A stretch of 64,000 bases of DNA. It comes from Lytechinus pictus (lineage: Eukaryota). Location of the stretch: NCBI RefSeq assembly GCF_037042905.1, contig NC_087253.1:16244001-16308000 (forward strand), written 5' to 3'. The translations under genes were made by a program, and so were the position numbers. Below the pieces are notes generated by a model that had not been told where the DNA came from, did not search any database, and worked only from the letters and a program-made list of their open reading frames with translations. Positions 1 through 31,200 of the stretch are shown here, piece after piece (position 1 is the first letter of the stretch; each line of letters begins with the position of its first letter).

Positions 1-456
1 CCGTCTAAACATAATCCTAAAAAAAATCAGCCTATGACGGAAGAAGCTATAAGATACCATTATTTTGATTATTTGTTGTTGAAATCGTCAGCAAAGCGTA
101 CAAGGGGCGGCGCCACTGGGGGAGTGTGCGATTACCTCTGTTTAAGAAGAGAAGAGCAAAACTAAATTTGCAATTATAAACCAAATTATAATTAAGTGCA
201 CAATAACCCGATAATTAAATTATAAAAAAAGAATATGATGCCGCCCTAAGGTCGCTTTGCCTGCCCCTATCAAGTTACCATTGCACCGTCCCTGTGTCCG
301 TCTACTGCTAAAACTACGCCCCGTTTCTGAGTCAATTTCTTTTTTACACGATCTCTCCCGATTCCTATTTATTTCCCATTCCCTACTTCAGAAATATAAT
401 AATCTGGGAGTGATTTAGGCACTTGATATCTTTGTATGGGGCTTTCTTCTATCCAG

Positions 457-614
457 ACCAAACTATTGCGGAGGATGCTTTGCCGATTTCTACGTTGGTG
501 ACATCAAGGTGAACTGTTCTGCGTGCTCTGAGGGTATGACCTTTGAGGAGTGTGGATCAGGATGTGGCCCTTTCAGTTGTGACAACCCTCCAAGAGATAT
601 ATGTCCAAGAATAT
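457..614 (+). CDS. TIL-repeat gene, 5' half of the exon interrupted by the Harbinger element (PNYCGGCFADFYVGDIKVNCSACSEGMTFEECGSGCGPFSCDNPPRDICPRI)
   Basis: Acceptor ccag at 453-456, phase 2. Open frame paralogous to the uninterrupted exon 12838-13457. An in-frame TGA at 614-616 is created by the insertion junction. Confidence 0.88.
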
Positions 615-922
615 GACCCCTGTTACACATGCGTCGGCTTTCAAAGCCGGCCCCGGAGGCGGCCTCACGCCTGCAATTTGAAGCCGCCTCAAAATCATCA
701 AACCCCTGTTACACATAGTCTCGGGCCCGCAATTTTGCGTCTACACATAGGCCGGCCTCACGTCGCCTTTTCACGAGCTGACGTTGGGGCGCACTTCATG
801 TAAACAAACGCTTAATATTTTCGCGCGGTTTGCAGGTCTTTTTAATTGCATTGGATCTCATCGACATCGCGACCGATCCGTACACATATCTTACCTCCAT
901 ATTTTGTTTATATAATTGCATT

Positions 923-2764
923 ATGAAGGTTAAGAATATCGTAACTATTATTTCTGATCGAAGGAGGGAATTTCGACGTGCTCAAAAAAGGCGATTCCGG
1001 GAGTTTGAAGCACGTCGTCGGCGAGTACGGTACTATTTTTTGTTATGTGCTATAACGTTTGCCTGCACCGTGGAAAGGAGTGTGTGGATGAAGGAGCGAT
1101 CTGGACATTTCTGGGAGAGGATAGTGGAAGGGAGATTCACGGCAAGAGATTTTCGTGAAAATTTCCGTGTGAACAAGTCGACATTTGATTTTCTGTGTGG
1201 TGAGCTAGCACCGGCTATTCGTCGCCAAAACACACGATGGCGTAAAGCAGTTTGTGTCAGAAAGAGAGTTGCCATAACTCTGTGGCGTTTATCCACAAAC
1301 TGCGAGTATCGAACAATCGGGCATCTTTTTGGGGTAGCGAGATGTACCGCCAATGTCATCGTCAACGACACCTGCCTTGTAATTGTACAAGAACTAATGA
1401 GAAGATATATTACCTTTCCTTCTGGAGATAGATTACGGGCAACTGTTCAGGGGTTCGAGGACATGGGGTTTCCCCAAGTTGCAGGTGCCATTGATGGAAC
1501 CCATATCCCTATAATTGGACCTGTTAATTACCATGCTGATTATCATAATCGAAAGGGATGGTACTCTGTCATTCTCCAGGCAGTTTGTGACCATAAGTAC
1601 ATGTTCACAGATATCATGGTAGGATGGCCAGGACGCTGCCACGATGCCCGGGTGCTGGCAAACTCTTCTTTTCACCGAAGAGCGGAAAATGGAGAACTGC
1701 TTCCAAATGTACGTTTACTTTTAAATCTAATTTATAAAACTTGAATTAAATTTCATTTTATTATTAAAGATTTAAGCCACAAAAGATTATGATAGACTAC
1801 AATCATTTAAAATCTCATAGATCTACAAGTCAATAGTAACATGCACATTTCATTTTTTTAAAGGGATAATATAAACAAAGGATTTAAAACAATAAATAAA
1901 CCTAGAGAAATCAAGCCTAGAATAAGGGTAGATCTTCTTTTAAAATTTCATAAGTAATAATAGGCTACCATTAGTTTGCTCCACCTATTCATCTAAAAAC
2001 ACTGAGGTTTGTGTGATTTTGATATTTCATCAGCAGGGCCATAGCCAGTGTTTGATGTTTGGGGGGCACATACATGTAATTGATCAACGTCCTGGGGAGG
2101 GGTCTATAAGGATGGGTGTGTGATCTTGGGGGGGGGGGCACGTGCCCCCCCCCCCTGGCTACGGGCCTGCATGTTCATCAGCATGATCAATGTGTATTTT
2201 AATGAATTAATTTTAATATATATTTTTCTAAACATCTTCATGATATTAAAATAGACCTCTACTTAGTATTGATGTTATTAATATTATTAAATGATTATAT
2301 TTCATTATTATCATTTTCAATACATTGTTTTTGACCAGATGACAAGAAACATCAATGGCCAAGATGTTCCGCTGATGATACTTGGGGACCCTGCCTACCC
2401 ACTGCTGCCATGGCTAATGAAAGGTTTTGCCGATAATGGTCGTCTGACTGAAGATCAGACTAACTTTAACTACAGGCTCAGCAGGGCGAGAATGGTCATC
2501 GAAGGTAGTTTTGGTAGACTGAAGGGGCGATGGAGATGCTTATTGAAGCGCAATGACAGCGCTCTTGAGAACGTAACTAATATTGTTGGAGCGTGTTGTA
2601 CCTTGCATAACCTTTGTCAGATGCAGTCCGATGAGCCAGATGACGAGTGGCTTGATGTTGCTCATGAATTACGAGAGTTTCAGCCACCTTGTCCTTTGCC
2701 AAATCAAAGGCCTGCACCATCAGCATCTGTAGTGCGTGATGCTCTTGTTCAGTATGTTAGGTAA
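923..2764 (+). CDS. Harbinger DDE transposase (HARBI1-like, DDE_Tnp_4); exons about 923-1708 and 2339-2764
   Basis: Motifs [64 protein letters not shown]. Phase-0 intron gt 1709 to ag 2338. The first in-frame ATG is at 923; the true start is uncertain. Confidence 0.92.
2034..2169. mobile_element. Poly-G/poly-C MITE in the transposase intron
   Basis: Inverted ends cagggccatagccag / ctggctacgggcctg with G and C runs. Confidence 0.6.
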
Positions 2765-4272
2765 CTTTTTTTATGCATTTCTTCAACCACTGTTAATGAT
2801 ATTCCACAGGTGTAAACAGAGCCTCAAATGAACTCATTCATTCGGTTAGTCAATGACCCCCCCCCCCCCCCCCCCCCAACCCCCGCCCTCATGATTGAAA
2901 ATGTTATGTAGCCTCTGTTTTGTAATGTAAAACAGTTATCAAGAATAGAGTTTTCTCTCTTGGACATTTCTCTTTGTTTTTCCTTTTTAATTATTAATTT
3001 ATGTTAATCATTCATAATAGACTATTGAGAAAATGCAAATCTGTTATTTTTTTATAATCCATTTTAAAGTAGATGGTTGGCCTTTTTGTAATGAATAATC
3101 TTTTTTTTTTTTAATAATATGCTTTTATTTCACCAAGTCATTTGTTTCATATTTTACTATACAGAGTGATGAAAAAGTAGTAAATTTAAGGTAGGCCTAT
3201 GGCAGATAAGATTATCAGGGCCAGAAGATTGTCAATTAATTAGAATGATTTTTTTTTCTTCTTTGTATCAGTCTCTTTCCCAATCCATGGATACAGTAAG
3301 ACTGGGTTTATGTTATTGTCAACCATAGCTGGGGGCTTTAGGTATGCATAGCAGAGGTTAATGTATGCACTGACATAGCAATGCATCTGACCAGTAGCAT
3401 AGCACACTGCAATCTTCTTTTCATCTTGTGTTTCTTCCCTGTTATGACTGACATAAGTTTAAGTGTTTTAAAACCGAATATTCAAATTCAAATTCATTTG
3501 CCTATATGATCTACAAGTGATGAACACATTTTAACCATCTTATCCTGTGCCCATTCAAAAGCCAGTTTTGTGTTATGTTATTTCATTTGAGGTAAAATGC
3601 AGTTGTATTGTTATTTTTTCAAGCAAATATAGTGCCAGAAGCATTATTTTTTTTCTTGTTGTCCATGTGACTTTCTTGCTATTTCATCAATGCGATAATT
3701 TATATCAATCATTAATCTTAAAAGATGCACTTTAAACTTGACACCAGCATGCCTCATCATGGGAAGATGAATTAATTTTGTTTAGGGTTATGTAGGTCAA
3801 AGGACACAGAGGTTAATACACATGAAACATTACCTATTTGTAGTTCTTTTATCATAATATCTTGTACTATTTGCTTCTTGTATTCAATGTGCTAACAAGT
3901 ATTCATTTGGAGAGGAATTTCAAACAAAGGTTACAGAGGTAAATGTATAATGTATATAAAACAATACCAGATAAACATGATTTATCTTCAAACCCATGTG
4001 GATAAGTAGTAATTGCTTGGGGGCAGGCGCAAGTGGTCATTATCTCTTTAGCTATGTGATTATATTGGATTGTATTCAACCACTATGAAATAGCTGTTTT
4101 GTACATATATGTCGTTTTTTCTTCTCTAACCACTTTTAGTTCAAAATTGTTAGGTATTTTCTGTGTATATGTTAAATACAACATGCCTCCGATAATGAAT
4201 AAAAAGAAGAAAAAACATCAAGAATTCAGCTAAGGGTCTATCCTATTATTTCTGTATTATAACACTCTAAAA

Positions 4273-4437
4273 GCAAACCAATCTAAATTGGAATCAAATG
4301 GGGACATATTTGTTTCTATTCTTATTTAGAATAGATTCTATTCATCTTTTTCCTTCGGATTCTCTTCAATTCTGAGAATTTGAATAGAAACTAATATGTC
4401 CCCATTTGATTCCTATTCATATTTGATTAGTTTGTTT
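4273..4437. repeat. Hairpin or MITE-like inverted repeat inside the Harbinger element
   Basis: ggaatcaaatgggacatatttgtttctattc pairs with gaatagaaactaatatgtccccatttgattcc. Confidence 0.6.
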
Positions 4438-5479
4438 AGAAAACACATTAAGTACATGTCAGTGGCAGACACAGAAATCTTGGGGGGGGGGGGGGGTACC
4501 CCAGGTGTTATAGTTTGTCTTGTTGATGTCCATTTTTTTCTGGGGGGGGGGGGCTGGAACATGTATCATTGTCCATTTAACATTGTAGAATCAAAAGGTA
4601 ATATTTTTTATTTAAAAAAAATTTAAACAAATTATGAAGTATAAAGATACAGAATTTAAACAAAAAGTTTCATAGTACATGTACCAAAAAGGCAATTTAG
4701 GTCACTATATTACAACATTATTTTGACTGACATGGGGTGTAATATAGAATTTTGTTGGGCCTGTAAATGCTTAAATATTCCAAGAGGGACTATTTTTCTG
4801 CAAAGCATGTAGTGTTTGGAAAATGTGATGTTTTCCAAAGAGGAGAAATTAATACCCGAGATGCCAAGATATGTTATCTTTCAACTCTTGCAAGATGACA
4901 TATGGCACCTCTATTATTATATTCTCTTAGGATTAAATCACACTTTCCTTGACTCTATAAGCTTTGCAAATACATGTATATATAAGATAGTCTTTTTTGT
5001 TAAAGAGCCGATTTGCTTTGAACGATCAAAATAACATCCATATTTTGTTTGCATTGTTTCGCAAATCCCCATGAAAAGCATGCTCAGCCAATCATTTGAC
5101 TGGATCTAGGTAGACAATGTATTAACAGAGGTAAAGGTATAGGGTTAGGTCACACATGCAATCAGGCAAGAAGACTGGAAATATACCAAACAAATTATTT
5201 ATTATTCAGAGAATAATGAACACGTACATAAAAAGTAAAACATAAAAGTGCAATATTTGCATAATGCATTCACAAAGTGCAATTTTCTTTACATAGTAAC
5301 TGAAAAGTTATAAAATATACCACAATTATGTCCTGAGTTTAAATTAGTTGGCACTATCGAAAGGCAGACTTTGGTAACGTTTTATTGCCAATATACAGTT
5401 TCTTTCTTAATAAATACAAAGAAAAGGGGGGAAAAGTTTTTGAAAAGTACTGCAAATGCAATGATGACAAACAAAAATG

Positions 5480-6445
5480 TAGACATGTGTGATAAAATAG
5501 CAAATAGACTTTGAAACTTTGTGTGAATGCATATGTATATAACCCATCTTATACATGTAATTGCAAGATAACAAGTACTGACAAAAACAAACAGTTAAAA
5601 AATATAATACTTTACACTTTCAAGTTGTGACTCAACTTTCTTTGGCAATATCACATTGGTACAAAATGAGGGTTGGCAGCGTTTGATATAGATCTTATTT
5701 AAGAACAATAAAACATAGTCATTTGAAAGGTATGTATATAATAGAAGATCAAAATAAAAATGGAATGTTTATATATATATACTGTATATGTACAAAAGTT
5801 CACATGTAGAAATGTGTGCTTAAATAGCAAACAGACTTTGTAACTTTGTGTGAATGCATATACCTGTTTTATACATGTACAGAAATTGCAAGATAACAAG
5901 TACTAACAAAAAGAGCAGTTAAAAAATATAATACTTTACACTTTCAAGTTGTGACTCAACTTTCTTTGGCAATATCAAATTGGTACAAAATGAGGGCTGG
6001 CAGCATTTGATATAGATCTTATTTAAGAACAATAAAACAGTCATTCGAAAAGGTATGTATATAATAGAAGACAAAATAAAAATGGAATGTTTATATATAC
6101 TGTAGATGTACAAAAGTTCACATGTAGAAATGTGTGCTTAAATAGCAAATAGACTTTGTAACTTTGTGTGAATGCATATGTATATAACCTGTTTTATACA
6201 TGTACAGTAATTGCAAGATAACAGGTACTGACAAAAATGAGCAGTAAAAAGATATAATACTTTACACTTTCAAGTTGTGACTCAACTTTCTTTGGCAATA
6301 TCAAATTGGTACAAAATGAGGGTTGGCAGCGGTTGATATAGATCTTATTTAAGAACAACAATAAAACATAGTCCATTCAAAAGTTATGCATAGAATAGAA
6401 GAAAAAATAAAAATGAATGTTTATATACAGATGTACAAAAGTTCC
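5480..6445. repeat. Three tandem copies of a ~320-bp unit
   Basis: aaatagcaaa.agactttg.aactttgtgtgaatgcat recurs at about 5496, 5822 and 6140, each followed by the same downstream blocks. Confidence 0.85.
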
Positions 6446-6804
6446 AATAGCAAGTAAATGGTTACTTGATGTAAAAAAGAACTACATAAAAACAAAGTTA
6501 TATGTTTATAAAAATCTATAAGTGCTAAGAACAAAAAGTACTAACATCTACAATTTACATGTAAATTCCCTTGCCCTTGGCAATGATTCTGGCAGCACTG
6601 AGATGGATGGCTAAGTAAAAACAAGGGTTTCAGCATGGCAAGAGTACAGGTGAATGATATGCAGCAACAAGTACTGAGGAAAGAAATTGTGATGAACAAA
6701 AATCCTGAAAAGTGTCATCTCATATGACAAATACATGTTTACCACCGTGGGAATTCCAAACACACACACTCCTCCACTTGAAGAATGCATTATGTTTGTA
6801 ACAA

Positions 6805-8460
6805 TTACAGTGGAGTGTAATCGTGATTGTAGGGCCAGGAATTTGGAGACCGCTCTGGACCGGACTGGGAGTTGTTTCCCTGTTGCTGCCACATTGAAGT
6901 TGACGACTGCCGCATACCAGCCATTAAGGCCTGAAGCATTTGGAGTTGATGCTGTCTATCACGTTCTTTTTCTTGCTCTCTATGCTCCCTCTCTTCTCTT
7001 CTCCTCCTCTCCTTCTCCTCTAGTTTTTTTTCTTCAGTACGCTGTGCCTTCATTAGGAGCTCACGCTCCCACTCCATTTGGCGCTGCATGAACCGATCCT
7101 CCCTAGCATTGAAGGCATTTGTACTGTCCTCCTCCAGTGTCTTTATCTCCTTGGCTATCAGTCCGAAGGACTCCTGCAGCTTTGATTTCTTCCGCTTTTC
7201 CCCTGTTATGAAGTAGGTAGTATAAAATACATCGTAAATAAAAAAAAATCAATCAAATGTGATAGCGGTAAGAAAGGTATACAATCATTTTATTTCTTTC
7301 AACTTGTTACACACATACTTTTCTGTATTTGACATAAGGCATGCAATATCACACTTCTAATAGCTAATACAACAAATCAAGTGAGAAAACCTTGAGTTGC
7401 AAAAAAAAATCATACTGCATGAAAGCAACATCAACGGGATGTAAAAGGCCCCTTTTCTTGAAAATTTGCTGAATCGAATTCAAATATCATATGAACTATA
7501 AATAAGCAAATGTATGGAAACAATCTGTTTATATTACCAGTTGCCTTACGTCCATTAGCAGATGATGTTGAAGGTCCCTCTAGATCCTCCGGTGGAAAAT
7601 TGCCAACTAAAGAAAATGAGGGATAGAAAAGCGATTACAATAAGTGACTACAATAATAAACATTTCATTTTTATGCATAAAATGAAGGGGAACTAATTTT
7701 TATGTTGTTATGTGTCACTGAAGTAAAAACATTTTAAAACAAAGGCTAACTTTCAATACATTTTTATTTTATTAAATTCAAATCAGTTCCTTTCATATTA
7801 CTCAGTATAAAATGATACATCAAGACAATATAATGATACCAATAATGTTTATTTTAAATGCTCACACTGAGAGGGTAAGAGCCAAAAAGGATTAGTCTTT
7901 ATAATTACACATGTATATACAAATAAACATGTATATGTGATTACAAATGAAAAAAGGAAGAGGAATCCTTTACCCAATTCTGTTGGTGCTTCCACATCAT
8001 TTTCCTCCAGTTCATCATCCGTTATACTTCTATCTTCTTCGGCTCCATCCTCCTCCTCCTCTCTCGGCAGTGAATCAGAGTCCACCGAGTCTAGCGACTC
8101 AGATTGATCCTCCTCCTCTGGTTGCGACGCCAGAATGGCAACTGGTGCAGTCTCTGGTCTGCCCCCAAAGATCTCCTGCAGTTCGCTATAGAATTTACAT
8201 GTAATTCTCCCCCTGCCTGATCGATTGTTATTGTCCTCCGTCTTTCGGAAGGACGCTCTTAGTTGTTTAATTTTCCGCTTGATTTGGTCCTCTGCCCTTT
8301 CGAACCCCCTTTCTTTCATCAATTGGCATATCTTACGAAATACCGTTTTGTTCCTTACTGTGCCATCCATCTGTTCTTGAATGTTTTTCTCCCGCCAAAT
8401 ATTCAGGAGGCACAGCGTCTCCACATCTTCCCACAGACTCCCTCTCCCTGTTGGTGCCAT
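6805..8460 (-). CDS. Harbinger Myb/SANT-like (trihelix-type) DNA-binding protein; exons 8460-7974, 7606-7538, 7202-6805 (317 aa)
   Basis: N-terminal WEDVETLCLLNIW...RNKTVFRKICQLMKERGFER...IKRKIKQLR...FYSELQEIFG. Acidic middle, KRKK NLS-like motif and coiled-coil C-terminus. Two phase-1 GT-AG introns join the frames, including a 69-bp exon absent from the ORF track. Confidence 0.9.
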
Positions 8461-10211
8461 TTTGATCTAAAATGAGAGAACAAATACAAATACAAATTAA
8501 TAATGGTAACCACAAAGATTACGATGTGGTAAAATTATTATATAAAATTATGTGTAACATCTATTAATCACCTTTTAGGATTTTTGATCTTGTCAACAAC
8601 TTCTCTTGTCAGGGGACAGTTGACATGAATATCATCAAAAATTCAAATTTAATGATTCAGATTGATCGACCACCTAGATATATGAAGGCCCTTCTCCCCC
8701 TGCTATGTAACATTTGATGATCGATGGACAAATTATTCCGCTAAAGTTCCATATGTACCCATCACTAAAATTGAATAAAACAATTGAAAAATATGGGTAT
8801 GACTTAGAATGACATAACTAATATAAATAAAGTATACAAAATATGGGAAATCACTTTCTAAAATAACTATCTAGAAATCCATATAGTATACAAAATATGG
8901 GAAATAATATTCTAAAAATCTATCAAGTCCATCAAGATAAACTCCTACAGCTCGGCAACTAACACGTGGCCAGCCGCTGATCTCTGAATACCGGTGGAAG
9001 AAGAACTTATTCATACTTTATTTACAAGTTTCTTTTGTTATCATATCACGTGTTAATCTGTTAATGTATACAATTTTTAATACAATTTGCTTCTAGTGAT
9101 AATTTTAGAGACGGTTTAATGATCATTTAGAGATGGTAGGCCTAGAGTGTTAATTATAGAGACAGTTAATACTATAATAGTAAGGTACGCAGAGTCTGTT
9201 ACAGCTAGGGTTAGGGTTCGCAGACCCCGGCGTCCATCCTAGAGTACGCGGCCTCCTGATGACTTTGGTTGGTTAGGGATAGGACTTCGAAGTTAGAGTT
9301 GTGTATATTATTGTACTGTAATCTGTATTAACATTGTTTTATGCACTCACCGCTAGAATCTACTTATTTTAGTCTACTTCTTTTTTGTGGGGATTTTACA
9401 GGCAGACACTATTTTATATGTAGATCTAGACCCTACTCATTTGTTTCAATGTCTAGCGACATATTTCATGTCCAATTTCTGACTATGTGCGACTCCGACT
9501 GAGTGGATTATTGGCATTTGAAATAATTAATGGCAATTGTCTAGTTTCATGTCTCATGGCCTGGCCTGCCCCTGGCCATGCCTTCAAAATCAAAGTTAAA
9601 TACTTCATCAAGTTCATGCCTCATGATCATGATGACTTTGTTTGAGGCATAAGATGATGTATTAACTCTGACAGTCTGACTCCGAGTCTGATGATGATGA
9701 GTCATAATTTCATAATCATATGAGAAAAATTATGACGGCTCATGATGTATGGCACTCCTGTCCAGGCTATTGTTTTTAGTCTGTCTATTAGTATTGATAA
9801 ATTATCATCGCCAACAAAAAAATAATGATCATTCTTCAGATGGTGCAATCACAGTAGCGATGTATTTAAAAACATCGAAATAAACAGGAAATGATCAGAC
9901 GATCGAAAATCATAATTCCCAAACCCACAGAAATATAGGGATGGGACTGAATTACAAGTCACCATCACTCATCAGTTCTGTTCGGAGAAAATACCAGGAA
10001 TAAACGGTTTAAACTTTTAGCCCACCAGTACAGAATATGTCGTGTCTTAGTGCAGGCTGCTGGATATGAGGAAATTAAAATTTAAAGCAATAAATGATGA
10101 AAAACAATGTAATTTTACGCTCGGGGCGAGGCTTACCTATAATATATACTGCATGCCTGGTCCAAATGGCAAAAGCGCGCCCGGCCGATGCATTGTTGAT
10201 GATGACAGGTC

Positions 10212-10231
10212 GCGTCACTTCCGCTTATAAG
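10212..10231. promoter_or_regulatory. Candidate element promoter: overlapping ETS/CRE-half motif next to CTTATAAG
   Basis: Minus strand reads GCGGAAGTGACGC in a GC-rich patch upstream of the Myb gene. Motif match only. Confidence 0.35.
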
Positions 10232-10448
10232 CCGGCGCCGAGTCCACTTTGGTGTTACACCTACCGATTGCGGGACTGAGTCCGGACTCGGGCCGGCCTC
10301 AAACCACATCCAGAGGTGGACTGAGTCCACCTGGCCTCAGTCCGGCCTCAGTCCGGCTTTTCAAAAAAAGTTGATGTTACACATACGTCGAGCCGCCTCC
10401 GGGGCCGGCCTCAGTCCACTTGCAAACGTATGTGTAACAGGGGTCTAT

Positions 10449-10907
10449 GTCGACCTGGTTGCTACTGTCCAGAAGGACTCGTCAATGATTATCAAGCAAA
10501 CGGTAACCAATGCATCGAGTTTGCCGAGTGTCAAGAGACACCTACCTGTCCAGAGGGTATGGTATTTGAAGAATGCGGATCTGGATGTGGTCCTTTCAGC
10601 TGTGACAGCCGTCCAAGAGATATATGCCCCAAAATATGTCGCCCTGGTTGCTACTGTCCCGAAGGACTCGTCAAAGACCGGGACAATGGCTATCAATGTC
10701 TTCAGCCGAGTTCCTGTTATGAACTAAGTTCTTGTCCCCCGGGTATGGTCTATGAAGAATGCGGTTCAGGATGTGGTCCCTTCAGCTGTGATAACCTGCC
10801 TCGAGATATATGCCCACGAATATGCCGTCCAGGCTGCTACTGTCCCGAAGGCCTTGTCCTTGATGAAGATTACGGGCATCGGTGCATACCTATTGATCAG
10901 TGCCACG
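10449..10907 (+). CDS. TIL-repeat gene, 3' half of the interrupted exon (rest of TIL1, plus TIL2 and TIL3)
   Basis: Repeated CPxGMxxEECGSGCGPFSCD...ICPxICRPGCYCPEGLV...C pattern. Donor g|gtatgt at 10908. The rejoined exon is 617 nt versus 620 nt for its paralog. Confidence 0.9.
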
Positions 10908-11849
10908 GTATGTAGTTTGAGGGAATTTATATCATAGCTCTGTTTGTTGAAATGTAGATATCGGGATTGTAGTTATGAATAATTAATTGCATACGGCTAG
11001 AAGTATTTTGTCATATCCATTAACTGAAAATATTGACATGATGACAATAAACAAGTCACGAATCCATATGTGAAATCTTATTAACGCTAACAATTGGTAT
11101 ATGGAAATCCAGAAAACTTGTTGTTCCCTTCTTCTTAGGATTAGATTTAAAAAAAATCAACAGGTTTCATGGGAGAAAATTGTGTAATTTTGTAGGGTTA
11201 CTTGCAAGTTTAATTATGCAGTTGGTATCTTATCTAACGCTTTTACTTATAAATATATATTTCGAGAATATTTTTTTGTAATTGTATTAGGCCTACAAAG
11301 ACCTTTTACAACTTTGTCAATCAAATCACTTTATAAGTTGTTTCAATAGTAGAATAGATTTATAACTCTTATAGCAGCATTTGATTTAGCAAGAATAAGC
11401 TTGCATGTTATTTGTGATCGATCAAGCTGACAGCGATGAATGAAATTAAGAAAGGGTCAGTTTTATCAGTTTCTAGAATTGATAACAAAGGTTATTTGGT
11501 TTTCCGATGGCGATTAAATATTAGAAGACCAATCTCATGATTATCGTGTCGTTTAGGCGAAAATAAGACAGCAGATCTACGGATCGGGATATGATATTTG
11601 TTGGTAATCTTTATTTGGTTTAATACTTTATCTGAATCTTTTTTTTACTCAGTTTGCTCATCAATGTCTTCGTTATCCTTAAAACATTGTCAGTATTCTT
11701 ATCACCACTATTTGCATCATTATTCTCATCAGTATTATAAACATCAATATATTTAGTGTTAACCTAGTTCATAATATGTTGCCATCATCGAAATTGTCCT
11801 TTGGTAGTTCTTCTGATATTGATATGATCATCATTTAACTGATATTTAG

Positions 11850-11931
11850 ATAACTGCCCTGATGTCTTGAACTGTGGAATGGACCCATGCGTTAACTCCG
11901 AATGTTTTGCATATCCCCTTGCTGAATGTAG
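11850..11931 (+). CDS. 82-bp exon encoding the first half of the NYCGGC Cys module (DNCPDVLNCGMDPCVNSECFAYPLAECR)
   Basis: tttag acceptor and gtaggc donor. Phase 1 to phase 2 exactly bridges 10907 and 12838. Not in the ORF track. Confidence 0.85.
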
Positions 11932-12000
11932 GTAGGCATACGTTCATCTTTCCATTATCACCCCCTCATATTCATCACCATCCGTGAAAGTACAGTCCAC

Positions 12001-12162
12001 CAGGGCTCCGTAACCCAAAGATTAGTGATCAATCGCTAAATGAACTGACCAATCAATATGAATGTTACACGCGCATTGGTTTTAAAATACTTGCCAGGGA
12101 CCAAGCAGTGCGGTTCTTTCATATTTGCAATTCATCGCAAACCTTTGTGTTACGGAGCCCTG
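12001..12162. mobile_element. MITE
   Basis: TIR cagggctccgtaac / gttacggagccctg. Confidence 0.7.
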
Positions 12163-12203
12163 GTTGGTGCATCGTCTTACGCAGGAGTGAGAACAGTGCT
12201 GTG

Positions 12204-12299
12204 GAAGATCTATTCTACATGCGGTTAAAAGAATCAGCGCAGTCTTAGCGCAGTTGGAACCGCGCTGATTATTTTTAACCGCACGTAGAATAGATCTTC
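12204..12299. repeat. Near-perfect palindrome (MITE-like)
   Basis: gaagatctattctacatgcggttaaaa...cagcgc pairs with gcgctga...ttttaaccgcacgtagaatagatcttc. Confidence 0.7.
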
Positions 12300-12837
12300 A
12301 TCTCTCGCACCTAAGCAAGAAGAATGGATAAGTAAAAAAAATATTTTTAAAAAATCCCGCTATATTTTCAGACATTTTGTGTAATCTGTCTTGAAATATC
12401 CCTTAAAAGAACGACTCACGAAAAATCCAGCTAATATAAAAGAAATTAAAATTCAGCTAAGAATTTAAGAAATCAAGGAAATTTACATTAAAACTTCATA
12501 CAGCAAAACAAAACATGTATTCTTTTTACATGTTTGGTTAAAGCTGAGCATTCCCGGAAAGAATCATTTCGTGAATTTCACTGATAAGTTCGATGAGCTA
12601 CTGAAATCAACGCATCTTACATCGGTTGTAAGATAGTAATCCACGGTTTATAGTCCAAGGTCGAGCCTACATTGGCCTGCATAGGGCGAGCGTCTAACCT
12701 CCCTACTTGGGAGCCATTCGGTCTATCATTAATTAAATGGTGTCACAAAATTTACTCTTCTCACACATAGCACTCGCTTAAGTTAATCCTATACTCATTA
12801 AGAGGGATATCCTGGTTTGTGATTTTTGTCTATCTAG

Positions 12838-13457
12838 GCCAAACTATTGTGGAGGATGCTACGCCGATTTTTACGTTGATGGCGTCTTGGTGAACTGTTC
12901 TGCATGCCCCGAGGGTATGACGTTTGAGGAGTGTGGATCGGGATGTGGCCCTCCCAGTTGTGACAACCCTCCAAGAGATATATGTCCAAGAATATGTCGA
13001 CCTGGTTGCTACTGTCCAGAAGGACTCGTCAAGGATTATCCGTCAAACGGCAACCAATGCATCGAGCCTGCTGCGTGCCAAGAGCCATCTTCCTGTCCAG
13101 AGGGTATGATCTATGAAGAATGCGGATCTGGATGTGGCCCTTTCAGCTGCGATAACCCTCCGATAAGGGGAGATTGTCCACAAATATGTAACCCTGGTTG
13201 TTACTGTCCAGAAGGACTCGTCAAGGATCGGGACAATGGCTATCAATGTCTTCCGCCGAGTGTTTGTTATGAACCAAGTTCTTGTCCACCGGGTCTGGTC
13301 TATGAGGAATGCGGTTCAGGATGTCGTCCATTCAGTTGTGATAACCTGCCTCGAGATATATGCCCACGAATATGCCGTCCAGGCTGCTACTGTCCCGAAG
13401 GCCTTGTCCTTGATCAAGATTATGGGGATCGGTGCATCCCTGTCGATCAGTGCGACG
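12838..13457 (+). CDS. TIL-repeat gene, intact exon: second half of the NYCGGC module plus three TIL domains
   Basis: tctag acceptor, phase 2. Three 10-Cys TIL repeats. Donor g|gtatgt, phase 1. Confidence 0.92.
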
Positions 13458-14328
13458 GTATGTAGTTTAAAGGAAATATAATCATAGTTTCATTAGGTGG
13501 AATTTAAGTAGTAATACAGCTTTTTGCTAATATTGCAGACGTTCTTAAGAATATTTTTGTCAGAACGCAAGGTTTATGTCGGAATAATTATGTTCCTCTT
13601 AACGCACAAAAAGTATGGATTTAGTCATAACTTAATAGTATCCATCGACTGCCATTTCATTTACTTATGATATAAGGATTTTGTCTTCATAGTAAGTGTA
13701 TCCGTCTAGCGAGTTGTAACAGTTGAGTTTGAATAAATGTGTTAGCACTCGATAATAATATTCTAGTACACGTATGCAGGTTCTTACCCTTTGATTTCTT
13801 TAACAATTTTAAAGAATGATCGGAATCATCTGTATCTCACACGGTGAAAACACATACAATCGAGTGGCAACTAAACATGGTAAACTCGTCGGATAGCTTT
13901 TCTTCTTAAGGCTACTTTTTTTCAATTAAGAAAAGAGGGAACAATTAAACTAACCCTGAAGAAATGTTCGTTTCTTGAATGAACGAACTCATGATTTAGG
14001 CATATCATCAATTTTTCAGCATTTTGGGCCGGACTAAATTCCCGTGATGAGGGGCATCAATTTGCAGTTTGTATTCGTTTAGGGAATGGAATATTCCTGG
14101 AAATTAGATGAAAATGCGCACTTTTATAGGGGTTTAATTTAAAATCGAAATCTGTAGCTACACGTGTACAGACCATCTATATTATATTTGCAATTATATA
14201 TTTTGTCACGGAGCTTTCATTGCTTTATGAGGCAGATTAGTTGGTATGCGATCAAAGTCCCATATTTTTTTTAAATACTTGTTATAAAGGAGACGAGTAT
14301 CCGGGTCGGAGGAAGGTCGGAGTAACTA

Positions 14329-17237: not shown

Positions 17238-17861
17238 AAGCTTAGGCGACGATTTGCGGTTTAGGTGCAATTTGCGGTTAGGGCCTTAACACGCCTCTGT
17301 TTTCGAAGACCCCTATTTCATGTTAAATTCCAGCTTCCACAATACCCTTCATTTGCAGAGGGCTATCTAGTTCTTAAGCCCCGCCCCCCCCCCCCCCCCC
17401 CCATTTCATAGAAACTTAGCCTAAGTTCTGAATGGTATGGTTTCAGATTTTGGAGCTGCACACCTCTATATCCTTTCCTAATCCGAGAGCGCCCCCAACC
17501 CAACCGGGAACTTTTGCGCGAACTATCAGGTAGCGATGCACAAACACCTTGCAAAACAATTATACACTTGTCTTACCCGCCTCACCTTGAGAGCGGATCA
17601 TCTAACGCTTGACTGGAAAAATGACACCAATTAATACCTTCTTCAAGAGGAAGAGTGGTTGTGTATCCTTCTCTCGAGAGCAAACCAACAAACGAGATGG
17701 AAGTTGAGAAGACTTTCGATTTTCCGGTGAGAAAATGCGGGTAGGCCTACTCGATGCCTCTGGGAACATGATCAAACTGTACGTACCACGTTCATGGCAG
17801 ACAGAACTTGTTCGTCGTGATGTCAGAGTATTTAGGAATGGTAATGATACTTTTACGATCA

Positions 17862-25200: not shown

Positions 25201-28200
25201 TGCTTCCCCGAGATTCGGTATCAAAATCGTCGAAATGCAAATAATATTAAATATTAAAAGTGATCATACTTCACGAATCATGTCTGCCCGGTGATATTGT
25301 TAATGATGTAACGAGCCACGGTTAAGACCTTAAAAATGAACTTGAATTGTAAAGAAATAAAAAATAAAGCTCAGTGATGCGGATTTTGACAGCTAAGGTC
25401 AAAACCTCAAACTTCTTTTGAAACCGGGAAAGATTTGGTCACTCTTATAAGAAGAAAAGTACGACGACAAAACTTTTGCAAAGATAGGTCACACAAAGTT
25501 GTTATTGTGAAGCTCAACTGACACATGATTGATTTGAATGTTTTGCGAATTGCTGAGATTCACTAGAACTGTTTTCATTGCATTTGGATAATTTCGAAAA
25601 TAAAAACAAACTTGTATATCTTTCTAAAACGTACGTTGTGTGGTTGTGTGCATGAACAGACAGGGAACTTCTATAATCGTGATAATGAAAATACAATTTT
25701 CACTAATCAAGTACGGAAAGTTCGGTCATTAAGCACTGGGGTCAAACAAATCCATTTTCAAAACTGCTACATTCTAAAGTCAAAAGGCGTTTAATATATA
25801 TATACGTTTAACATTTCACCTGTTTTTTTTTTCCATTCATATTTAAACAGAAGCTCCATGTCCGGTAACGGGAGAATGGTACGTGGATTGGGACGCCTCC
25901 TACGAGTGTCTCTCGCAGCTTTCTCAGCCATTCCCTGGTGCTATTCCCGGTCAGATCCTGCCTCTGTTGACCGTAACCGATGTCATACAAGCAGCAGGAG
26001 CGTCCTGGACCGCCGACAACCTCATTGAATCAGAAGGGGAGATATGTGTTAGGATCATACCCCAGCTCTCGGCAGCTGCGTTTGGAGCTGATATCTTCAG
26101 AGAGTACTGCGATCCTGTCCTGACGTCTTTGAGAGAGGGGACGCAGCTTGATGCAGAAGGACACTGTAGGATGATATTCAACATAACAGGGTACATGTCC
26201 TCATTCATGGGGGCTGCCATTACTCCAACACCAACTACTGATACCGAATACCCTACGGGAATCGCCGCATTACGACCTTTCGACTTTGAGGGGGTCATAA
26301 GGGACATTGTTGCCGAGCAATTCGGGATCACCAGTGACGACGTGGACGCAATCTGTAGTGCTCGACAGGTTCTAGTGGATTCTGGGTTGGCTTTGCGGGA
26401 ACTTGTCTCAAATTTCCTTGTGGCATTTGTCGAAGCTCTCATACCCAGAGCTGCGGAGATCTGTAATAGCTGGGATGCCATCAATTCGGCTATTGAGGCT
26501 GCGTCGGGTCCGTACGATTCACCACCTGAGATATTCAACGACGTGTCCGACCTAATAGCACATTTAGTAGGCTTTGAAAACAGAGAGGCTTTGTGCCAAC
26601 GTTTGAACATATCTACTTCCAGCCCACTGCTTCATCTTGCAGCTTCAGATATTGTAGGTAATATGCTCTCTGTGTTGACCGATTCTCAACATTGTTCTGC
26701 CATCGCTCAGGAGGCTATAGATCTTTCTTTGGCGTACACCCCTACCCTAGATAGAGACACGCTAAATCTTCAAATCTATCAGATAACAGGGATTAACGGC
26801 ACCGACCAGCTCTGTCAGGTTGTCGAAGACGCATTCCAGGCAGAAGGTGGGTAACACTATTATCTCATATATATATATATAATGAGAGATGGTACCGATC
26901 GAGACAAGGGATTCTAGAGGTTGTAATGGCATTATGTACTTACATGATTCTACACAGACCTGTCTTCTATCTGCATGTTTTCCCTCCATTATCTTAGAAA
27001 AAATAGAGGATCGTCACCTCTCATAAATGTGAAATCCAACTCACTTCAACCCAGTTCACCTACATGTATTATCCAGCCTTTTTCTTTATTTCCTTGTGAT
27101 GATAACAAAGTGGATATTGCAGATTGATCAGATACTTGTATGTTATTCCATTTACTTTCTACAAATCCACTGTGCCTTTCTGAAATACGGATAGCAACGT
27201 CGTGGAGGGACACGGTTTGTCTACATTGCTATGTTATGATTGTGCATGGGCCCAAAGAATACTTCAATGGTCGAAACCTCGCATATATAAAATCAAAATT
27301 ATACTTTGGTTATGTTAATTTAGTTAGTAAAGTTTGTTAGGTTAGCAAGTTTGGTTCTAATATGAAATTCCTAACATGCTTAAAGAAAATTGTTTATAAG
27401 TATACCCGTGTTCATGGTGTTACTTAAGGTTTTATCCGGTTATCAGTGTGATAACGTGCGTTTTGGGGAATCGGTCTTCTTTTGTATCACTTAGGACTTG
27501 AACATGTTGAAGGGGACGTACGCCTGGCTGATGGGTCTACTGAACTAGAGGGACGTGTTGAGATCTTTGTGAATGGCTCTTGGTCTCCAGTGTGTGACAA
27601 TTCTTTCAACGAAGAAGAGGCCGAAGTTGTTTGCCGACAGCTAGGATTTGACGCAGCAGTTGCAACGTGGTGTTGTTCGCGGTATGGATTCACCGACGTA
27701 CCGGGCGTCCTTGGCGGATTAAGCTGCACCGGGACGGAGGACAACCTTCTTGCATGTCCCCAAGATGAACCAGCCTACACCTACAATCCCTGCTATCCCT
27801 GGGCAAACGCTGGAGTCGTGTGTAGAGGTAAGTGTACAAAGCATAAGGCAAAATTTACCCTTATATATATTGGTTTATGGGTGATCTTCAGGGGAGGACA
27901 ATTTCGAGGTTACGTAACATTTGCTCCGGCGACAATTGCTCCGATAAAAAATCTGCGCTTTGAGCCAAACTCAACCTCAAACACTAAATAAATCCTAATC
28001 CTTACGTTTACATTATTCTGAGCCAAAAACTCTGGTACAGCCCTAACTCTCAACCCCATGTCCTCTGAGCTACTACGACCGGACGAATTGTCGCAGGAGC
28101 ATATGTTGTGTCACCAATCATTTTGGAATTATGTGCAACAATTAATCTAATCACGTAGTCTAAGTAAAATAAAAAATGTTAAGTGGAAATTAAGAAAAAT

Positions 28201-31200
28201 GTTTGATAAAAACAATTTCTGTTGTGAATGTTGAAACCCGTTGGACCCTTCTATAAGGATGCCATGAAGATCCCTACCCCCCCCCCCCCGCCTTCCTTCC
28301 TTCTTGAACATAGAAACACTACTACTTATCTTTTTTTATTAATTTCACAGGAGAACTTACGCCTTGCCCTCTTCCAATTGGACCAGCAATTGATTGGGAA
28401 GCGATATACGAATGTGAACTGCCTTACTTCCAAGAGTTCATACAGTCATACATCAGATACCCTCCGGTTCCCGGGGAGGTCATGCCTTTCCTCACTGTAG
28501 CAAACATTATCGACGCTGCAGGAGCCATTTGGGGATCTGACGACTTGTTCGAAGGGTTAGGCAACTTCTGCACCCTCATTGCTCCACGAGCGACAGCGTC
28601 AGCTGGTCCTGACATATTTCCTGGCATATGCGATCCTCTGATACCTTCGGCGGACGGCGTTGACTTAGATGGGTCCGTTGGTGAAGAGATATGTCGATAC
28701 ATCTACTCCTTGGCAACCCATGGACCTTACCCTGAACCTTCCTATACCGACGCTCCCTTTAGTACGACCACCATACCACCTCAAACAAGCATGAGAAGTA
28801 GCTCAACACCCGCAGTGTGGCCCACGGATTTCCCCTCGTTCATTGAATCAATAACCCCGATCATCTGCATATTCCCTCTTTCGTCCTATGATATTACCTC
28901 CGAAGGCCCTGACTTTGGCATCGACGCCCTTCAAGGATTCGACCCGGTACCTATCTTATTGCAAGCCGTCGATAACGTGCTGAACATCACGGAATATGAC
29001 CAGGACAGTTTGTGCTCTGGAGTGAATCACCTGACTGATGTTGACAACCGGCCACGTGATCTTGCGATAGAGTTCATGACGGAAGTGCTGGCAGCCCTCT
29101 TCCCAATAGGTAGTGAAATTTGCCAGGAGTGGGACAGCTTTATCGAAGCCCTGGTGGCCGAGTCTGGTAGTTACGTCGAAGTCGATCTCGGATTCCTGGT
29201 GGAAGAGATATCTGGAGTCGTTGCGCTGCTGACCGACTTCCCCGACAGGGATTCATTGTGTACGTACATCCAGACCGCTACTGCCTTGCCGGGAGAACAT
29301 GCAAACACCTTTGAACGATTCCTTGTGTTAAACGCCCTGAATGTGCTGCATGATGAAGAAAAATGTGTCTCTGTACTTGACAGCGCCCTGGCAGTCGCTG
29401 ACGCTATACCAGGAACTTCTCGGGAGGAGGTGGAAAATATCTACATGCCAATGTACAGTGGATTTACTGATATCCTTCAGATGTGCCGGTACATAAGTAC
29501 AGCTTTCGGTCCAAGAAGTAAGTTTATTTCAAACTTCCGTAATTTCATTGTTAAAATATTATTCAGTACTCGTAACTCTTGTAAACAAATTCGTTTAAAG
29601 GAACAACAAAATACATTTTATTCTATTAAAAAAACGATCATATTAGTCCAATATTCGTCCATGCACTAATGTAGGTGCCATGCCTTTATACGCATAACCT
29701 TATTCAAACGGCGATGGAGAAATGTTTTAAGCAAGTTTTAGACAATTATACAGAACTAAATTATCATAACGATAGCCTCGACGAGTGCTCAATATCATAT
29801 ATCTTTTTAGTTCAGAACATTGTTGTGAACCTATAAAATTAAGTAAAAAGTGTTCTGAACAAAGCGCAGATGAATACATTCATACAAAAGCTGCGCTATA
29901 CAAATTTATATTATTTTATTATTATTACTATTATTATTTTTCTCAAACAAGTTTATACCCTCTTTTAACAGGTTTGTTCATTAGATCGACACTTCTGTAA
30001 GGACTTTGCACTTGCTTTTTTTGTTCTACCATTCCCCATATCCACTATGTCGACCGCACATTTTGTACTTTGCCAAAGCATGGCGCAAAGAATAACAACA
30101 CGCAGGGAGCGGATGGGCAGTTTGTAAAGCGTTTGCCTTTCAGGCCAAAGATCATTGGTTCGAATCCAACCACATGTGACTGCGCGCGGATGACTAAAGC
30201 CAAGATTGTGTGCCCACGTGCCCTCCCCTGTTTCGTTCTTAGACACGGACAGGAAAAATCCATCCTCCTCGGACAGGATGTTAAGTTGAGGCCTCGTGTG
30301 GAGGGAAGTCACCACCTATGTACTCAAGGACCCACGTCACTAATCGCACACCGACAGGAGGACCCTGGTGTGGTGTTAGGCACGAACCTTATCAGTTATG
30401 TCGGGAGGAGAGCATCGCGGGTCACAATGACTCAGTTCGCGGTTCGCCTCCTAGTGACAACAAACGGAACAAAACTAATTACCATGAAGACGCGTTTCCA
30501 CCCAAACAAGTAAATTGAAATCTGGTAAAATTGTAAGAAGATTGATATGATGGACAAAGGATAATAACAATATTTTTTTCTTCCTCTTTTTTTGTTACCA
30601 CTCAAAGCGCCTCGACTTCCCATCCGGCTCGCTGACGGTAGCACTCCAGATGAAGGACGCGTTGAAGTTCAATACAACGGTACTTGGGGGACCGTCTGCG
30701 ACGATGACTTCGACGATGATGACGCCACCGTTGTGTGCCGGCAACTTGGATACCGAGGGGAAGCCATTTCACTTGGAAACTTGAATCCTGGCAGTGGTGA
30801 TATCCTTTATGACGATCTGAGATGCCTAGGGGTCGAGTCTTTCCTCGGCCAATGCCCAAATGCTGGTTTAACAATCAATAATTGTGTCCACTATGAGGAT
30901 ATCAGCGTGAGCTGCAGTCTTGAAGGTAAAGATTATTGTGATAGACGCATGGGCCACATGTTCCGAAGTCGGGTATGATTTTAACTCTGGTCTAAAGTTG
31001 TGGTTTAACTATGGATAGCAAATTTTGACACGAATCTCTCACGGTACATGCTCAGTACAATTTCTTATTTGACACTCAAATAAAGTAATAAACCATATGT
31101 TAACGGTAGCTAAAATATTTGTATTCATCATTAAAACATGATGAAAAGCACAGAAAAAAATATAAAATATAAAATGTAGATTTGTGACAAATTTCGGCTT

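What the first reader, a model, noticed from the sequence alone, without database searches (positions are those of the whole stretch)
457..10907. An intact autonomous Harbinger splits a protease-inhibitor exon at the TIL reactive loop, and both halves are undamaged
Seen: perfect TIRs, a TAT duplication, and a transposase and Myb partner that both splice to open frames. Removing the element plus one TAT rebuilds a flawless 617-nt exon matching its 620-nt paralog. The site is the Ile-Cys of CPRIC, the P1'-Cys6 of the TIL inhibitory loop. The exon is phase 2-1, so skipping it alone frameshifts. Established: PIF/Harbinger elements need both proteins and often excise without a footprint; TAA/TTA is the classical target, so TAT is atypical. 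Inference: this is a self-sufficient, potentially revertible gene break in a putative immune locus, conceptually like the transposon-split exon proposed for the origin of RAG-rearranged genes. The simpler reading is a recent polymorphic insertion of an active family, which would still be a candidate transposition tool.
Basis: partly seen in the sequence, partly recalled or inferred. Interest (0 to 1): 0.82.

Follow-up and report, generated by a model that had tools for sequence, protein, structure and literature searches.

The report
Young active-looking Harbinger transposon splitting an exon
A 9.8-kb two-gene "Harbinger" jumping gene, one of at least ten virtually identical and fully intact copies in the painted sea urchin genome, has very recently landed inside a coding exon of a TIL/SRCR gene and truncates it. 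This is an ordinary, probably polymorphic knockout allele made by a family that looks active today, not a built-in gene switch.

Summary
Element 615-10445 (9,831 bp) has 16-nt perfect TIRs and a TAT duplication. Removing it with one TAT rebuilds an open 617-nt exon of three TIL domains, and the break lies between the P1' Ile and the next Cys of CPRIC.

Both element genes are intact. The 403-aa DDE transposase aligns end to end with homologues. The 317-aa Myb protein equals an annotated Lytechinus pictus protein, and its splicing is confirmed by RNA.

The same assembly holds at least 13 loci encoding that exact Myb protein. The ten fetched (one is this window) are all full length and 99.98% identical, with no variable site in either coding region. 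TSDs are mostly TTA/TAA. This copy has one private substitution.

So the undamaged exon halves reflect extreme youth, not preservation. The occupied allele reads ATA-TGA, an immediate stop.

Occupancy in other animals could not be settled. Three of four RNA runs do not express the host exon. The fourth has a low-depth uninterrupted junction that may be an allele or a paralog.

Verdict: a new, probably active member of PIF/Harbinger. The RAG-like switch idea is unsupported. The scan noted this family elsewhere (s1-327705).

The parts
457..614 (+). Left part of the split host exon: pre-TIL stretch plus the first half of TIL domain 1. It ends in ...CCA AGA ATA T, and its last 3 nt (612-614, TAT) are the left TSD copy. 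In the occupied allele the frame reads ATA TGA, a stop at the junction.
615..10445 (+). Complete autonomous PIF/Harbinger element, 9,831 bp. It is identical to locus L010 and 99.96-99.99% identical in substitutions to nine other full-length copies in assembly GCA_037042905.1.
615..634 (+). Left TIR: 16 nt perfect, 19/20 overall. Followed by an 18-nt second inverted block at 646-663 and a subterminal TIR-core repeat at 701-716.
923..1708 (+). Transposase CDS exon 1 (262 aa): HTH region and the first part of DDE_Tnp_4, including the first catalytic Asp (AIDGTHIPI). The donor AAT|GTACGT at 1709 is inferred from homology. An annotated 193-aa model instead fits the donor at 1619.
2339..2764 (+). 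Transposase CDS exon 2 (141 aa plus stop): the rest of DDE_Tnp_4, with LGDPAYP and the [12 protein letters not shown] Glu. The spliced product is 403 aa.
5477..6427 (.). Internal 324-bp tandem repeat (2.9 copies) in the AT-rich non-coding middle of the element.
6805..7202 (-). Myb-partner gene, last coding exon (E/R/K-rich C-terminal part, stop at 6805-6807).
7538..7606 (-). Myb-partner gene, middle coding exon (69 nt).
7974..8460 (-). Myb-partner gene, first coding exon with the Myb_DNA-bind_4 domain (ATG at 8460). The mRNA continues to about 8466-8469. Some transcripts also carry a 5'UTR intron at 8467-10136, with a leader exon starting in the right terminal region (10137 onwards).
10426..10445 (-). 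Right TIR, with further TIR-core repeats at about 10251-10262 and 10376-10386 and an 11-nt mini-repeat at 10333-10357.
10446..10907 (+). Right TSD copy (10446-10448, TAT) and the right part of the split exon: second half of TIL 1, then TIL 2 and TIL 3. The donor is at 10908.
11850..11931 (+). 82-nt Cys-rich host exon. It is spliced to 10907 in an RNA contig of run X1. Together with the 617-nt exon it forms a 699-nt in-frame module.
12838..13457 (+). Paralogous 620-nt 3xTIL exon. It has two 78-nt tracts 100% identical to the split exon, one of them spanning the insertion site (a gene-conversion signature).

Best explanation
This is a very recent germline insertion of a currently or very recently active autonomous PIF/Harbinger family of Lytechinus pictus into the first TIL domain of a 3xTIL exon of a TIL + SRCR mosaic gene.

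Inferred from the superfamily's known mechanism: the 403-aa DDE transposase, recruited to the ends by the 317-aa Myb/SANT partner that binds the TIR and subterminal TGTTACACAT repeats, cut an AT-rich trinucleotide (here TAT rather than the family's usual TTA/TAA) and duplicated it.

Shown from sequence: the occupied allele terminates at a TGA formed at the junction, so it is a truncating and probably null allele. It might be hypomorphic if the 699-nt two-exon module is skipped.

Inferred from age: because the copy differs from its nine fetched siblings by 1-4 substitutions in 9.8 kb, the insertion is far younger than typical allelic coalescence in sea urchins. It is therefore most likely polymorphic or private to the sequenced haplotype.

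The exon halves are intact simply because no time has passed. Precise excision, the rule for this superfamily, could revert it, but only as an unprogrammed by-product of transposon activity.
For: - Anatomy: TIRs, TSD and a perfect exon rebuild.
- Superfamily: DDE_Tnp_4 and Myb_DNA-bind_4 hits. The transposase aligns without gaps across the splice, and the D, D, E blocks are conserved.
- Myb gene: its splicing is seen in RNA contigs and reads with 0 differences, and the product is identical to NCBI 'trichohyalin-like [L. pictus]', 317 aa.
- Copy number: 13 contig loci encode that exact protein. Of the ten fetched, all are full length (9,821-9,836 bp) with perfect TIRs.
- Youth: mean pairwise substitution divergence is 0.018%, no variable column lies in either CDS, and this copy has one private substitution.
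- Target sites: family TSDs are TTA x4, TAA x1 and TAT x1, with a C...G-flanked extended target.
- Other insertions: RNA from other animals joins the right TIR to at least four other flanks, one of which is the L009 flank.
- Stop at the junction.
- Literature: two proteins are required, and excision is usually precise (109/110 events) and helped by TSD microhomology (PMC2836001, PMC4561436).
Against: - No DNA run of this species was available, so presence or absence in other individuals, and heterozygosity in the reference animal, are untested.
- Transposase expression and its splice are not shown. At this locus an annotated 193-aa model fits an alternative donor at 1619, which would delete 30 conserved residues. 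At most other loci no transposase gene was called.
- The near-identity of copies could be slightly inflated by assembly polishing. However, independent RNA contigs match this copy perfectly over about 3.8 kb.
- No new insertion or excision event has been observed directly.
Confidence: 0.88

Rival explanations
1. Programmed or co-opted gene switch. The element is kept in the germline as a removable interruption, and its own transposase excises it precisely in somatic (for example coelomocyte) lineages to assemble a functional TIL/SRCR gene, as in RAG-mediated joining or ciliate IES removal.
For: - The element is self-sufficient, and the superfamily excises precisely.
- The host is an SRCR-family gene of the kind expressed in sea urchin immune cells. 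Homology is shown; the expression pattern is from my memory of the literature.
- One RNA run has an uninterrupted junction 98% identical to the right exon half.
Against: - The copy has one private substitution and belongs to a burst of 99.98% identical copies inserted at unrelated sites. There has been no time for selection to build a dependence.
- The uninterrupted contig differs from this haplotype at 7 of 371 sites, 4 of them non-synonymous. It is therefore another allele or a paralog, not an excision product of this allele.
- The target choice is explained by TAT availability.
- No read joins this locus to the element in any of the four RNA runs.
Confidence: 0.02
2. Tolerated insertion. 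The allele still makes a functional protein because the split exon is skipped together with the 82-nt exon (699 nt, in frame). Alternatively, the gene is one redundant member of a large SRCR family, so the insertion is effectively neutral and may drift to high frequency.
For: - The 617 + 82 nt module is in frame, and a near-duplicate module follows.
- The window holds a long array of SRCR exons.
- The host exon is silent in three of four RNA runs.
Against: No transcript skipping the module was seen. The only host transcript evidence (X1) contains the exon and splices 10907 to 11850.
Confidence: 0.08
3. Assembly artefact. A repeat-mediated mis-join placed a copy of the multi-copy element inside the exon.
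For: At least 13 near-identical 9.8-kb copies are a classic source of mis-joins.
Against: - The two flanks fit each other to the base and rebuild one exon with a 3-bp duplication. A mis-join between two different loci cannot produce that.
- The copy carries its own private substitution and its own homopolymer lengths.
Confidence: 0.02

Closest known systems
Ping/Pong/mPing (rice) and PIF (maize), the naturally active PIF/Harbinger elements
   Same: Two separate genes (a Myb-like ORF1 and a DDE transposase), short TIRs, a 3-bp TWA duplication with an extended C...G-flanked target, and young near-identical copies. Excision is expected to be precise (PMC2836001, PMC4561436).
   Different: This is an animal (echinoderm) element. 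Both genes have introns. It is much longer (9.8 kb, with about 4 kb of AT-rich non-coding interior and a 324-bp tandem repeat). No high-copy MITE partner was seen here; there is only a hint of one derivative in RNA reads. Activity is inferred, not shown.
Harbinger3_DR (zebrafish, reconstructed; Sinzelle et al. 2008, as cited in PMC2836001 and PMC13668399)
   Same: A deuterostome Harbinger with a DDE_Tnp_4 transposase and a Myb/SANT partner that binds terminal or subterminal repeats. The transposase family is that of HARBI1 (top homologues are named 'putative nuclease HARBI1').
   Different: Harbinger3_DR had to be rebuilt from dead copies. Here at least ten natural copies are already intact and identical in both coding regions.
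Harbinger-1M_cIno of Caenorhabditis inopinata (PMC13668399) and Harbinger-Snek of sea kraits with sea-urchin relatives (PMC8437027)
   Same: These are recent reports of active or explosively expanded animal Harbingers. One was caught as a spontaneous exon insertion (dpy-11, TSD TTA). The other links sea-urchin Harbingers to horizontal transfer.
   Different: The C. inopinata insertion was a non-autonomous element. The relationship of the present family to Harbinger-Snek was not tested.
RAG/Transib-derived V(D)J joining and ciliate IES excision (transposon-interrupted coding sequence rejoined in the soma)
   Same: A transposon with inverted ends sits inside coding sequence and could in principle be removed precisely.
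   Different: In those systems the interruptions are ancient, fixed and removed by a domesticated, developmentally regulated enzyme. Here the interruption is a days-old (in evolutionary terms) copy of a selfish family, and no somatic product has been seen.
TIL (MEROPS I8, Ascaris-type) serine-protease inhibitors such as AMCI (PDB 1CCV), BSTI (1HX2) and LL-TIL (8HWU)
   Same: The 10-Cys pattern is present. The loop C-P-(R/K/Q)-I-C aligns with the C-T-M-Q-C reactive loop of AMCI, so P1 would be Arg or Lys in five of the six domains.
   Different: Here the domains are repeats inside a large SRCR mosaic protein, not a free small inhibitor. Many TIL domains in mosaic proteins are not inhibitors, and inhibition is untested.

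Membership tests
PIF/Harbinger DNA transposons | DDE transposase of the DDE_Tnp_4 / HARBI1 type with an intact catalytic triad | tested here: met
   PF13359 hits on both exons. The 403-aa spliced product aligns end to end with 11 homologues, and the AIDGTH, LGDPAYP and RMVIE..FGRLK blocks are conserved.
PIF/Harbinger DNA transposons | [quoted passage not shown] | tested here: met
   PF13837 at E = 4e-18. The three-exon mRNA is confirmed by RNA joints. The product is identical to the annotated 317-aa protein.
PIF/Harbinger DNA transposons | Short TIRs and a 3-bp target-site duplication, typically TWA | tested here: met
   16-nt perfect TIRs in all ten copies. Perfect TSDs are TTA x4, TAA x1 and TAT x1 (this copy). 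Four copies have unequal flanking trinucleotides.
PIF/Harbinger DNA transposons | Transposition that needs both proteins; precise excision | not testable with these tools
   Known for Ping/Pong and Harbinger3_DR. This needs an excision assay.
Currently active transposon family | Multiple near-identical intact copies at different sites | tested here: met
   Ten full-length copies, 0.018% mean divergence, identical CDSs. At least four other right-end flanks in RNA.
Currently active transposon family | Both genes expressed as correctly spliced mRNA | tested here: inconclusive
   Myb: yes. Transposase: RNA-type runs hold 62-76% of the sampled words of window 1-6000, but the splice was not examined. 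An annotated 193-aa model fits an alternative donor that removes conserved residues.
Currently active transposon family | Presence/absence polymorphism or de novo events among individuals | tested here: inconclusive
   No DNA run of the species was offered. In RNA, three of the four flanks are not among the ten fetched reference loci, but three reference loci were not fetched.
Programmed transposon-split gene (RAG-like / IES-like) | Interruption fixed and old; rejoined product made in the soma from the same haplotype | tested here: not met
   One private substitution in 9.8 kb. The only uninterrupted junction seen differs at 7/371 sites from this haplotype. Fixation itself is not testable here.
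TIL (I8) protease-inhibitor domain | Ten-cysteine TIL fold signature and a Pfam TIL match | tested here: met
   PF01826, 3 stretches, E = 5e-25. All three domains of the rejoined exon keep 10 Cys.
TIL (I8) protease-inhibitor domain | Functional reactive-site loop and inhibitory activity | not testable with these tools
   Only the alignment of CPRIC to the CTMQC loop of 1CCV. The position of the reactive bond is taken from memory of the literature.

The most novel reading that the evidence does not exclude
The family is live. Carriers of this allele would then be genetic mosaics in which precise excision restores the TIL/SRCR exon in some somatic or germ cells. In the strongest form, the host exploits this as a stochastic on-switch in an immune-gene family, a present-day analogue of the transposon-split receptor exon postulated for the origin of V(D)J recombination. 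The evidence does not exclude occasional unprogrammed reversion, which is plausible at perhaps 0.2-0.3. The probability given here is for a host-exploited switch.
Probability: 0.02. Interest if true: 0.9.

Novelty: new member of a known kind. Interest (0 to 1): 0.45.

Why it matters
Naturally intact, autonomous Harbinger elements are rare in animals. The zebrafish reference element had to be reconstructed.

Here a laboratory sea urchin that is being developed for genetics carries at least ten, and probably 13 or more, complete and coding-identical copies. One of them has been caught knocking out a coding exon.

If the family is active, three things follow:
- It is a source of spontaneous mutations and revertants in L. 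pictus lines.
- It is a ready-made two-component system for studying Harbinger transposition in a deuterostome.
- It is a candidate transgenesis or insertional-mutagenesis tool.

For the host gene it is simply a truncating allele in a large, redundant TIL/SRCR family.

Tried and rejected
- Exact-product look-ups of the unspliced Myb ORF and the transposase exon-2 ORF found nothing on record.
- The nearest foreign transposase relative (P0001, 84% identity) sits on a contig whose DNA could not be served.
- Read laying is limited to one call and 6 kb, so I chose the Myb gene and the right junction. The left junction and the transposase splice stayed unexamined.
- I considered using reads with the rejoined 17-mer as an empty-site test. 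I rejected it because the paralog exon carries the same 78-nt tract.
- I considered that the X1 uninterrupted contig might be the paralog exon. Rejected: it has 7 differences, where about 45 would be expected. Whether it is the empty allele or another close paralog remains open. The 3.2 kb upstream of the window (from L010) holds no further TIL exon.
- I considered exact splicing-out of the element as a new intron. Rejected: there is no GT at the left end and no AG at the element's last base, and no such joint appears in RNA.
- I considered assembly mis-join. Rejected: the flanks rebuild one exon exactly.
- Literature searches for a described active Harbinger in L. pictus or for the assembly's origin gave nothing relevant.
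- Horizontal transfer was considered because of the patchy distribution of the family among coded organisms. It is not claimed, because multi-copy families inflate word shares and the organisms are coded.
Full report
**What is there.** The window carries a 9,831-bp insertion at 615-10445.
- Its ends are GACCCCTGTTACACAT and the exact reverse complement: 16 nt perfect, 19 of 20 over 615-634 / 10426-10445. A second perfect 18-nt inverted block lies at 646-663 / 10392-10409, and a TIR-core repeat at 701-716.
- The motif has 3 matches in 64 kb, against 0.02 expected.
- TAT flanks both ends, at 612-614 and 10446-10448.
- Joining 457-614 to 10449-10907 gives a 617-nt sequence open in one frame. It encodes a short Cys-containing lead-in and three complete 10-Cys TIL domains.
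- A 620-nt paralog exon lies at 12838-13457, 88% identical in nucleotides.
- In the occupied state the host frame reads ...CCA AGA ATA TGA, a stop made by the first bases of the element.

**The site.** The TSD straddles the Ile and Cys codons of C-P-R-I-C. HMMER aligns this loop to C-T-M-Q-C of the honeybee chymotrypsin inhibitor 1CCV.
- That inhibitor's reactive bond is Met30-Gln31, from my memory of the literature.
- This location is not remarkable. The GC-rich exon has only 3 TAA, 3 TTA and 19 TAT trinucleotides. Nine of the TAT lie in the three DICPxIC loops, three of them at exactly this position.

**The element's genes.** The two genes are convergent.
- *Transposase (+ strand).* Exon 923-1708 joined to 2339-2764 (donor AAT|GTACGT, acceptor ...ACCAG|ATG) gives 403 aa. 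The product aligns without a gap across the junction to eleven full-length homologues from echinoderms, hemichordate, amphioxus, sponge and fish. The three catalytic blocks are conserved.
- This transposase splice rests on homology only. The assembly's annotation at this locus has a 193-aa product over 1463-2764. I can reproduce its length only with ATG 1463 and an upstream donor at 1619, which would delete 30 conserved residues. At most sibling loci no transposase gene was called.
- *Myb partner (- strand).* Exons 8460-7974, 7606-7538 and 7202-6805 give 317 aa with a Myb_DNA-bind_4 domain.
- RNA confirms these Myb junctions exactly. A 1,477-nt contig of run X2 covers 6600-7201, 7537-7606 and 7974-8469 with no difference. 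The same joints occur in X1 and in raw reads of X23, on the strand expected for a minus-strand gene.
- Some transcripts also remove a 5'UTR intron at 8467-10136, so transcription starts in the right terminal region.
- The predicted Myb protein is identical to NCBI 'trichohyalin-like [Lytechinus pictus]'.

**The family.** The exact 317-aa Myb product is encoded on 13 contig loci. The ten fetched all come from assembly GCA_037042905.1, and L010 is this window.
- All ten are full length (9,821-9,836 bp) with both perfect TIRs.
- In a multiple alignment the mean pairwise substitution divergence is 0.018%. Most variable columns are homopolymer lengths, and none lies in either coding region.
- The window copy has a single private substitution, at 4357.
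- Perfect TSDs are TTA (4), TAA (1) and TAT (this copy). The base before the TSD tends to be C, and the base after it is G in 8 of 10 copies, recalling the extended PIF target.
- In RNA of other animals the right TIR end runs on into at least four other flanks, one of which is the flank of L009. One flank belongs to a derivative that shares only the last 43 nt.
- RNA-type runs of the species hold 62-76% of the sampled words of window 1-6000.
- This is a very young, multi-copy, transcribed family with every structural requirement for autonomy.
- A caveat: polishing of a repeat-rich assembly can homogenise copies. However, independent RNA contigs are also identical to this copy over about 3.8 kb.

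**The host gene.** The best library match of the paralog exon is S. purpuratus XP_030844633.1, 'scavenger receptor cysteine-rich protein isoform X5' (74% identity).
- That protein has three N-terminal TIL domains, SRCR repeats and a 340-residue unnamed region. All of these map onto plus-strand exons of this window.
- An RNA contig of X1 splices 10907 to an 82-nt exon at 11850-11931. The unit is therefore a 617/620-nt TIL exon plus an 82-nt exon, 699 nt in total and in frame.
- The split exon and its paralog share two 78-nt tracts of perfect identity (permutation P = 0.002, and below 5e-5 for the second). This is a gene-conversion signature, and one tract spans the insertion site.

**Is the insertion polymorphic, and is it excised?** No DNA run of the species was offered.
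- On window 6600-11399, runs X2, X23 and X24 show no coverage of the host exon. No read in any run joins the TIR to this locus's flank.
- X1 has a low-depth contig matching 10446-10816 with 7 differences. Four of them are the paralog's states, four change the amino acid, and none creates a stop.
- That contig is preceded by 70 nt that the tool placed on the equivalent first half of TIL 2. It therefore has an uninterrupted TIL junction.
- It is not the neighbouring paralog, which would differ at about 45 sites. It is either the empty allele of another animal or a further close paralog.
- Because it differs from this haplotype, it is not an excision product of this allele.

**Conclusion.**
- This is a fresh insertion of a family that looks active, producing a truncating allele.
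- The intact exon halves follow from youth.
- Reversion by precise excision is plausible for this superfamily (PMC2836001: 109 of 110 events were precise; PMC4561436: TSD microhomology helps repair). Nothing indicates a programmed role.
- The scan had already flagged what is evidently the same family on another chromosome: s1-327705, 9,836 letters, the length of L005 and L007.

Noticed in passing
L001, L002, L006, L007 (element ends at about 8016 and 17840-17851 of each locus): Four of ten near-identical copies do not have a direct 3-bp duplication. Their flanking trinucleotides are TAA/TTA, TGA/TTA, TTA/TAA and TAT/ATA. In three of these pairs the flanking trinucleotides are exact reverse complements (TAA/TTA, TTA/TAA, TAT/ATA), so they extend the TIR. 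Three pairs differ only at the central base (TAA/TTA, TGA/TTA, TTA/TAA). This could reflect carry-over of donor-site bases after staggered cleavage inside the TSD, or recombination between copies.
   Followed up: partly
window 571-650 region of the exon alignment: 573-614 plus 10449-10485, versus 12955-13032; a second tract lies in TIL 3 (about 10791-10868 versus 13341-13418): Two 78-nt tracts of perfect identity sit between the split exon and its 88%-identical paralog. This is a gene-conversion signature (permutation P = 0.002, and below 5e-5 for the second). It confounds any short-read test for the empty site.
   Followed up: yes
window 1463-2764 (L010 15697-16998): The annotated transposase model at this locus is 193 aa. 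It fits ATG 1463 plus an alternative donor at 1619 (ATG|GTAGGA), which removes the conserved GWPGRxHDARV block. If that splice is real, it would yield an inactive isoform and could limit activity.
   Followed up: partly
window 10430-13465: The annotation calls a 395-aa TIL gene that starts at an ATG inside the right TIR (ATGTGTAACAGGGGTC TAT GTC...), in frame with the right exon half. The element's end could therefore supply a start codon for an N-terminally truncated product without a signal peptide.
   Followed up: no
(coded organisms): The family's words are held by DNA runs of organisms B (0.47) and C (0.34), which do not hold the host flank. DNA runs of organism D hold the host flank (0.05-0.20) but are not among the holders of the element. 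This patchy distribution is compatible with a recent invasion or horizontal transfer. Sea-urchin Harbingers have been linked to transfer into sea kraits (PMC8437027).
   Followed up: no
window 25859-26839 and 28317-29513: The unnamed helical, Cys-patterned region noted by the scan (s1-329203) matches residues 432-771 of the S. purpuratus SRCR protein XP_030844633.1 at 65% identity. It is therefore a conserved module of this gene family rather than a window-specific oddity.
   Followed up: partly
window 41665-43422 (+) and 49862-51886 (-): Two long reverse-transcriptase ORFs (LINE-type, 585 and 674 aa) are inserted within the SRCR exon array. The SRCR exons around 52-58 kb form a recent tandem duplication: ORFs at 52125/55719, 52966/56563 and 54219/57709 are identical or nearly identical (the first pair differs only by about two residues from a third copy at 39967).
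   Followed up: no
window 10403-10447, runs X23 and X24: 15-21 reads per run share only the last 43 nt of the element. They have different sequence inside (…TCTATCAAATGGAC before 10403) and a TAA-CAAGCAAG flank. This is a transcribed non-autonomous derivative or relative with the same end.
   Followed up: no
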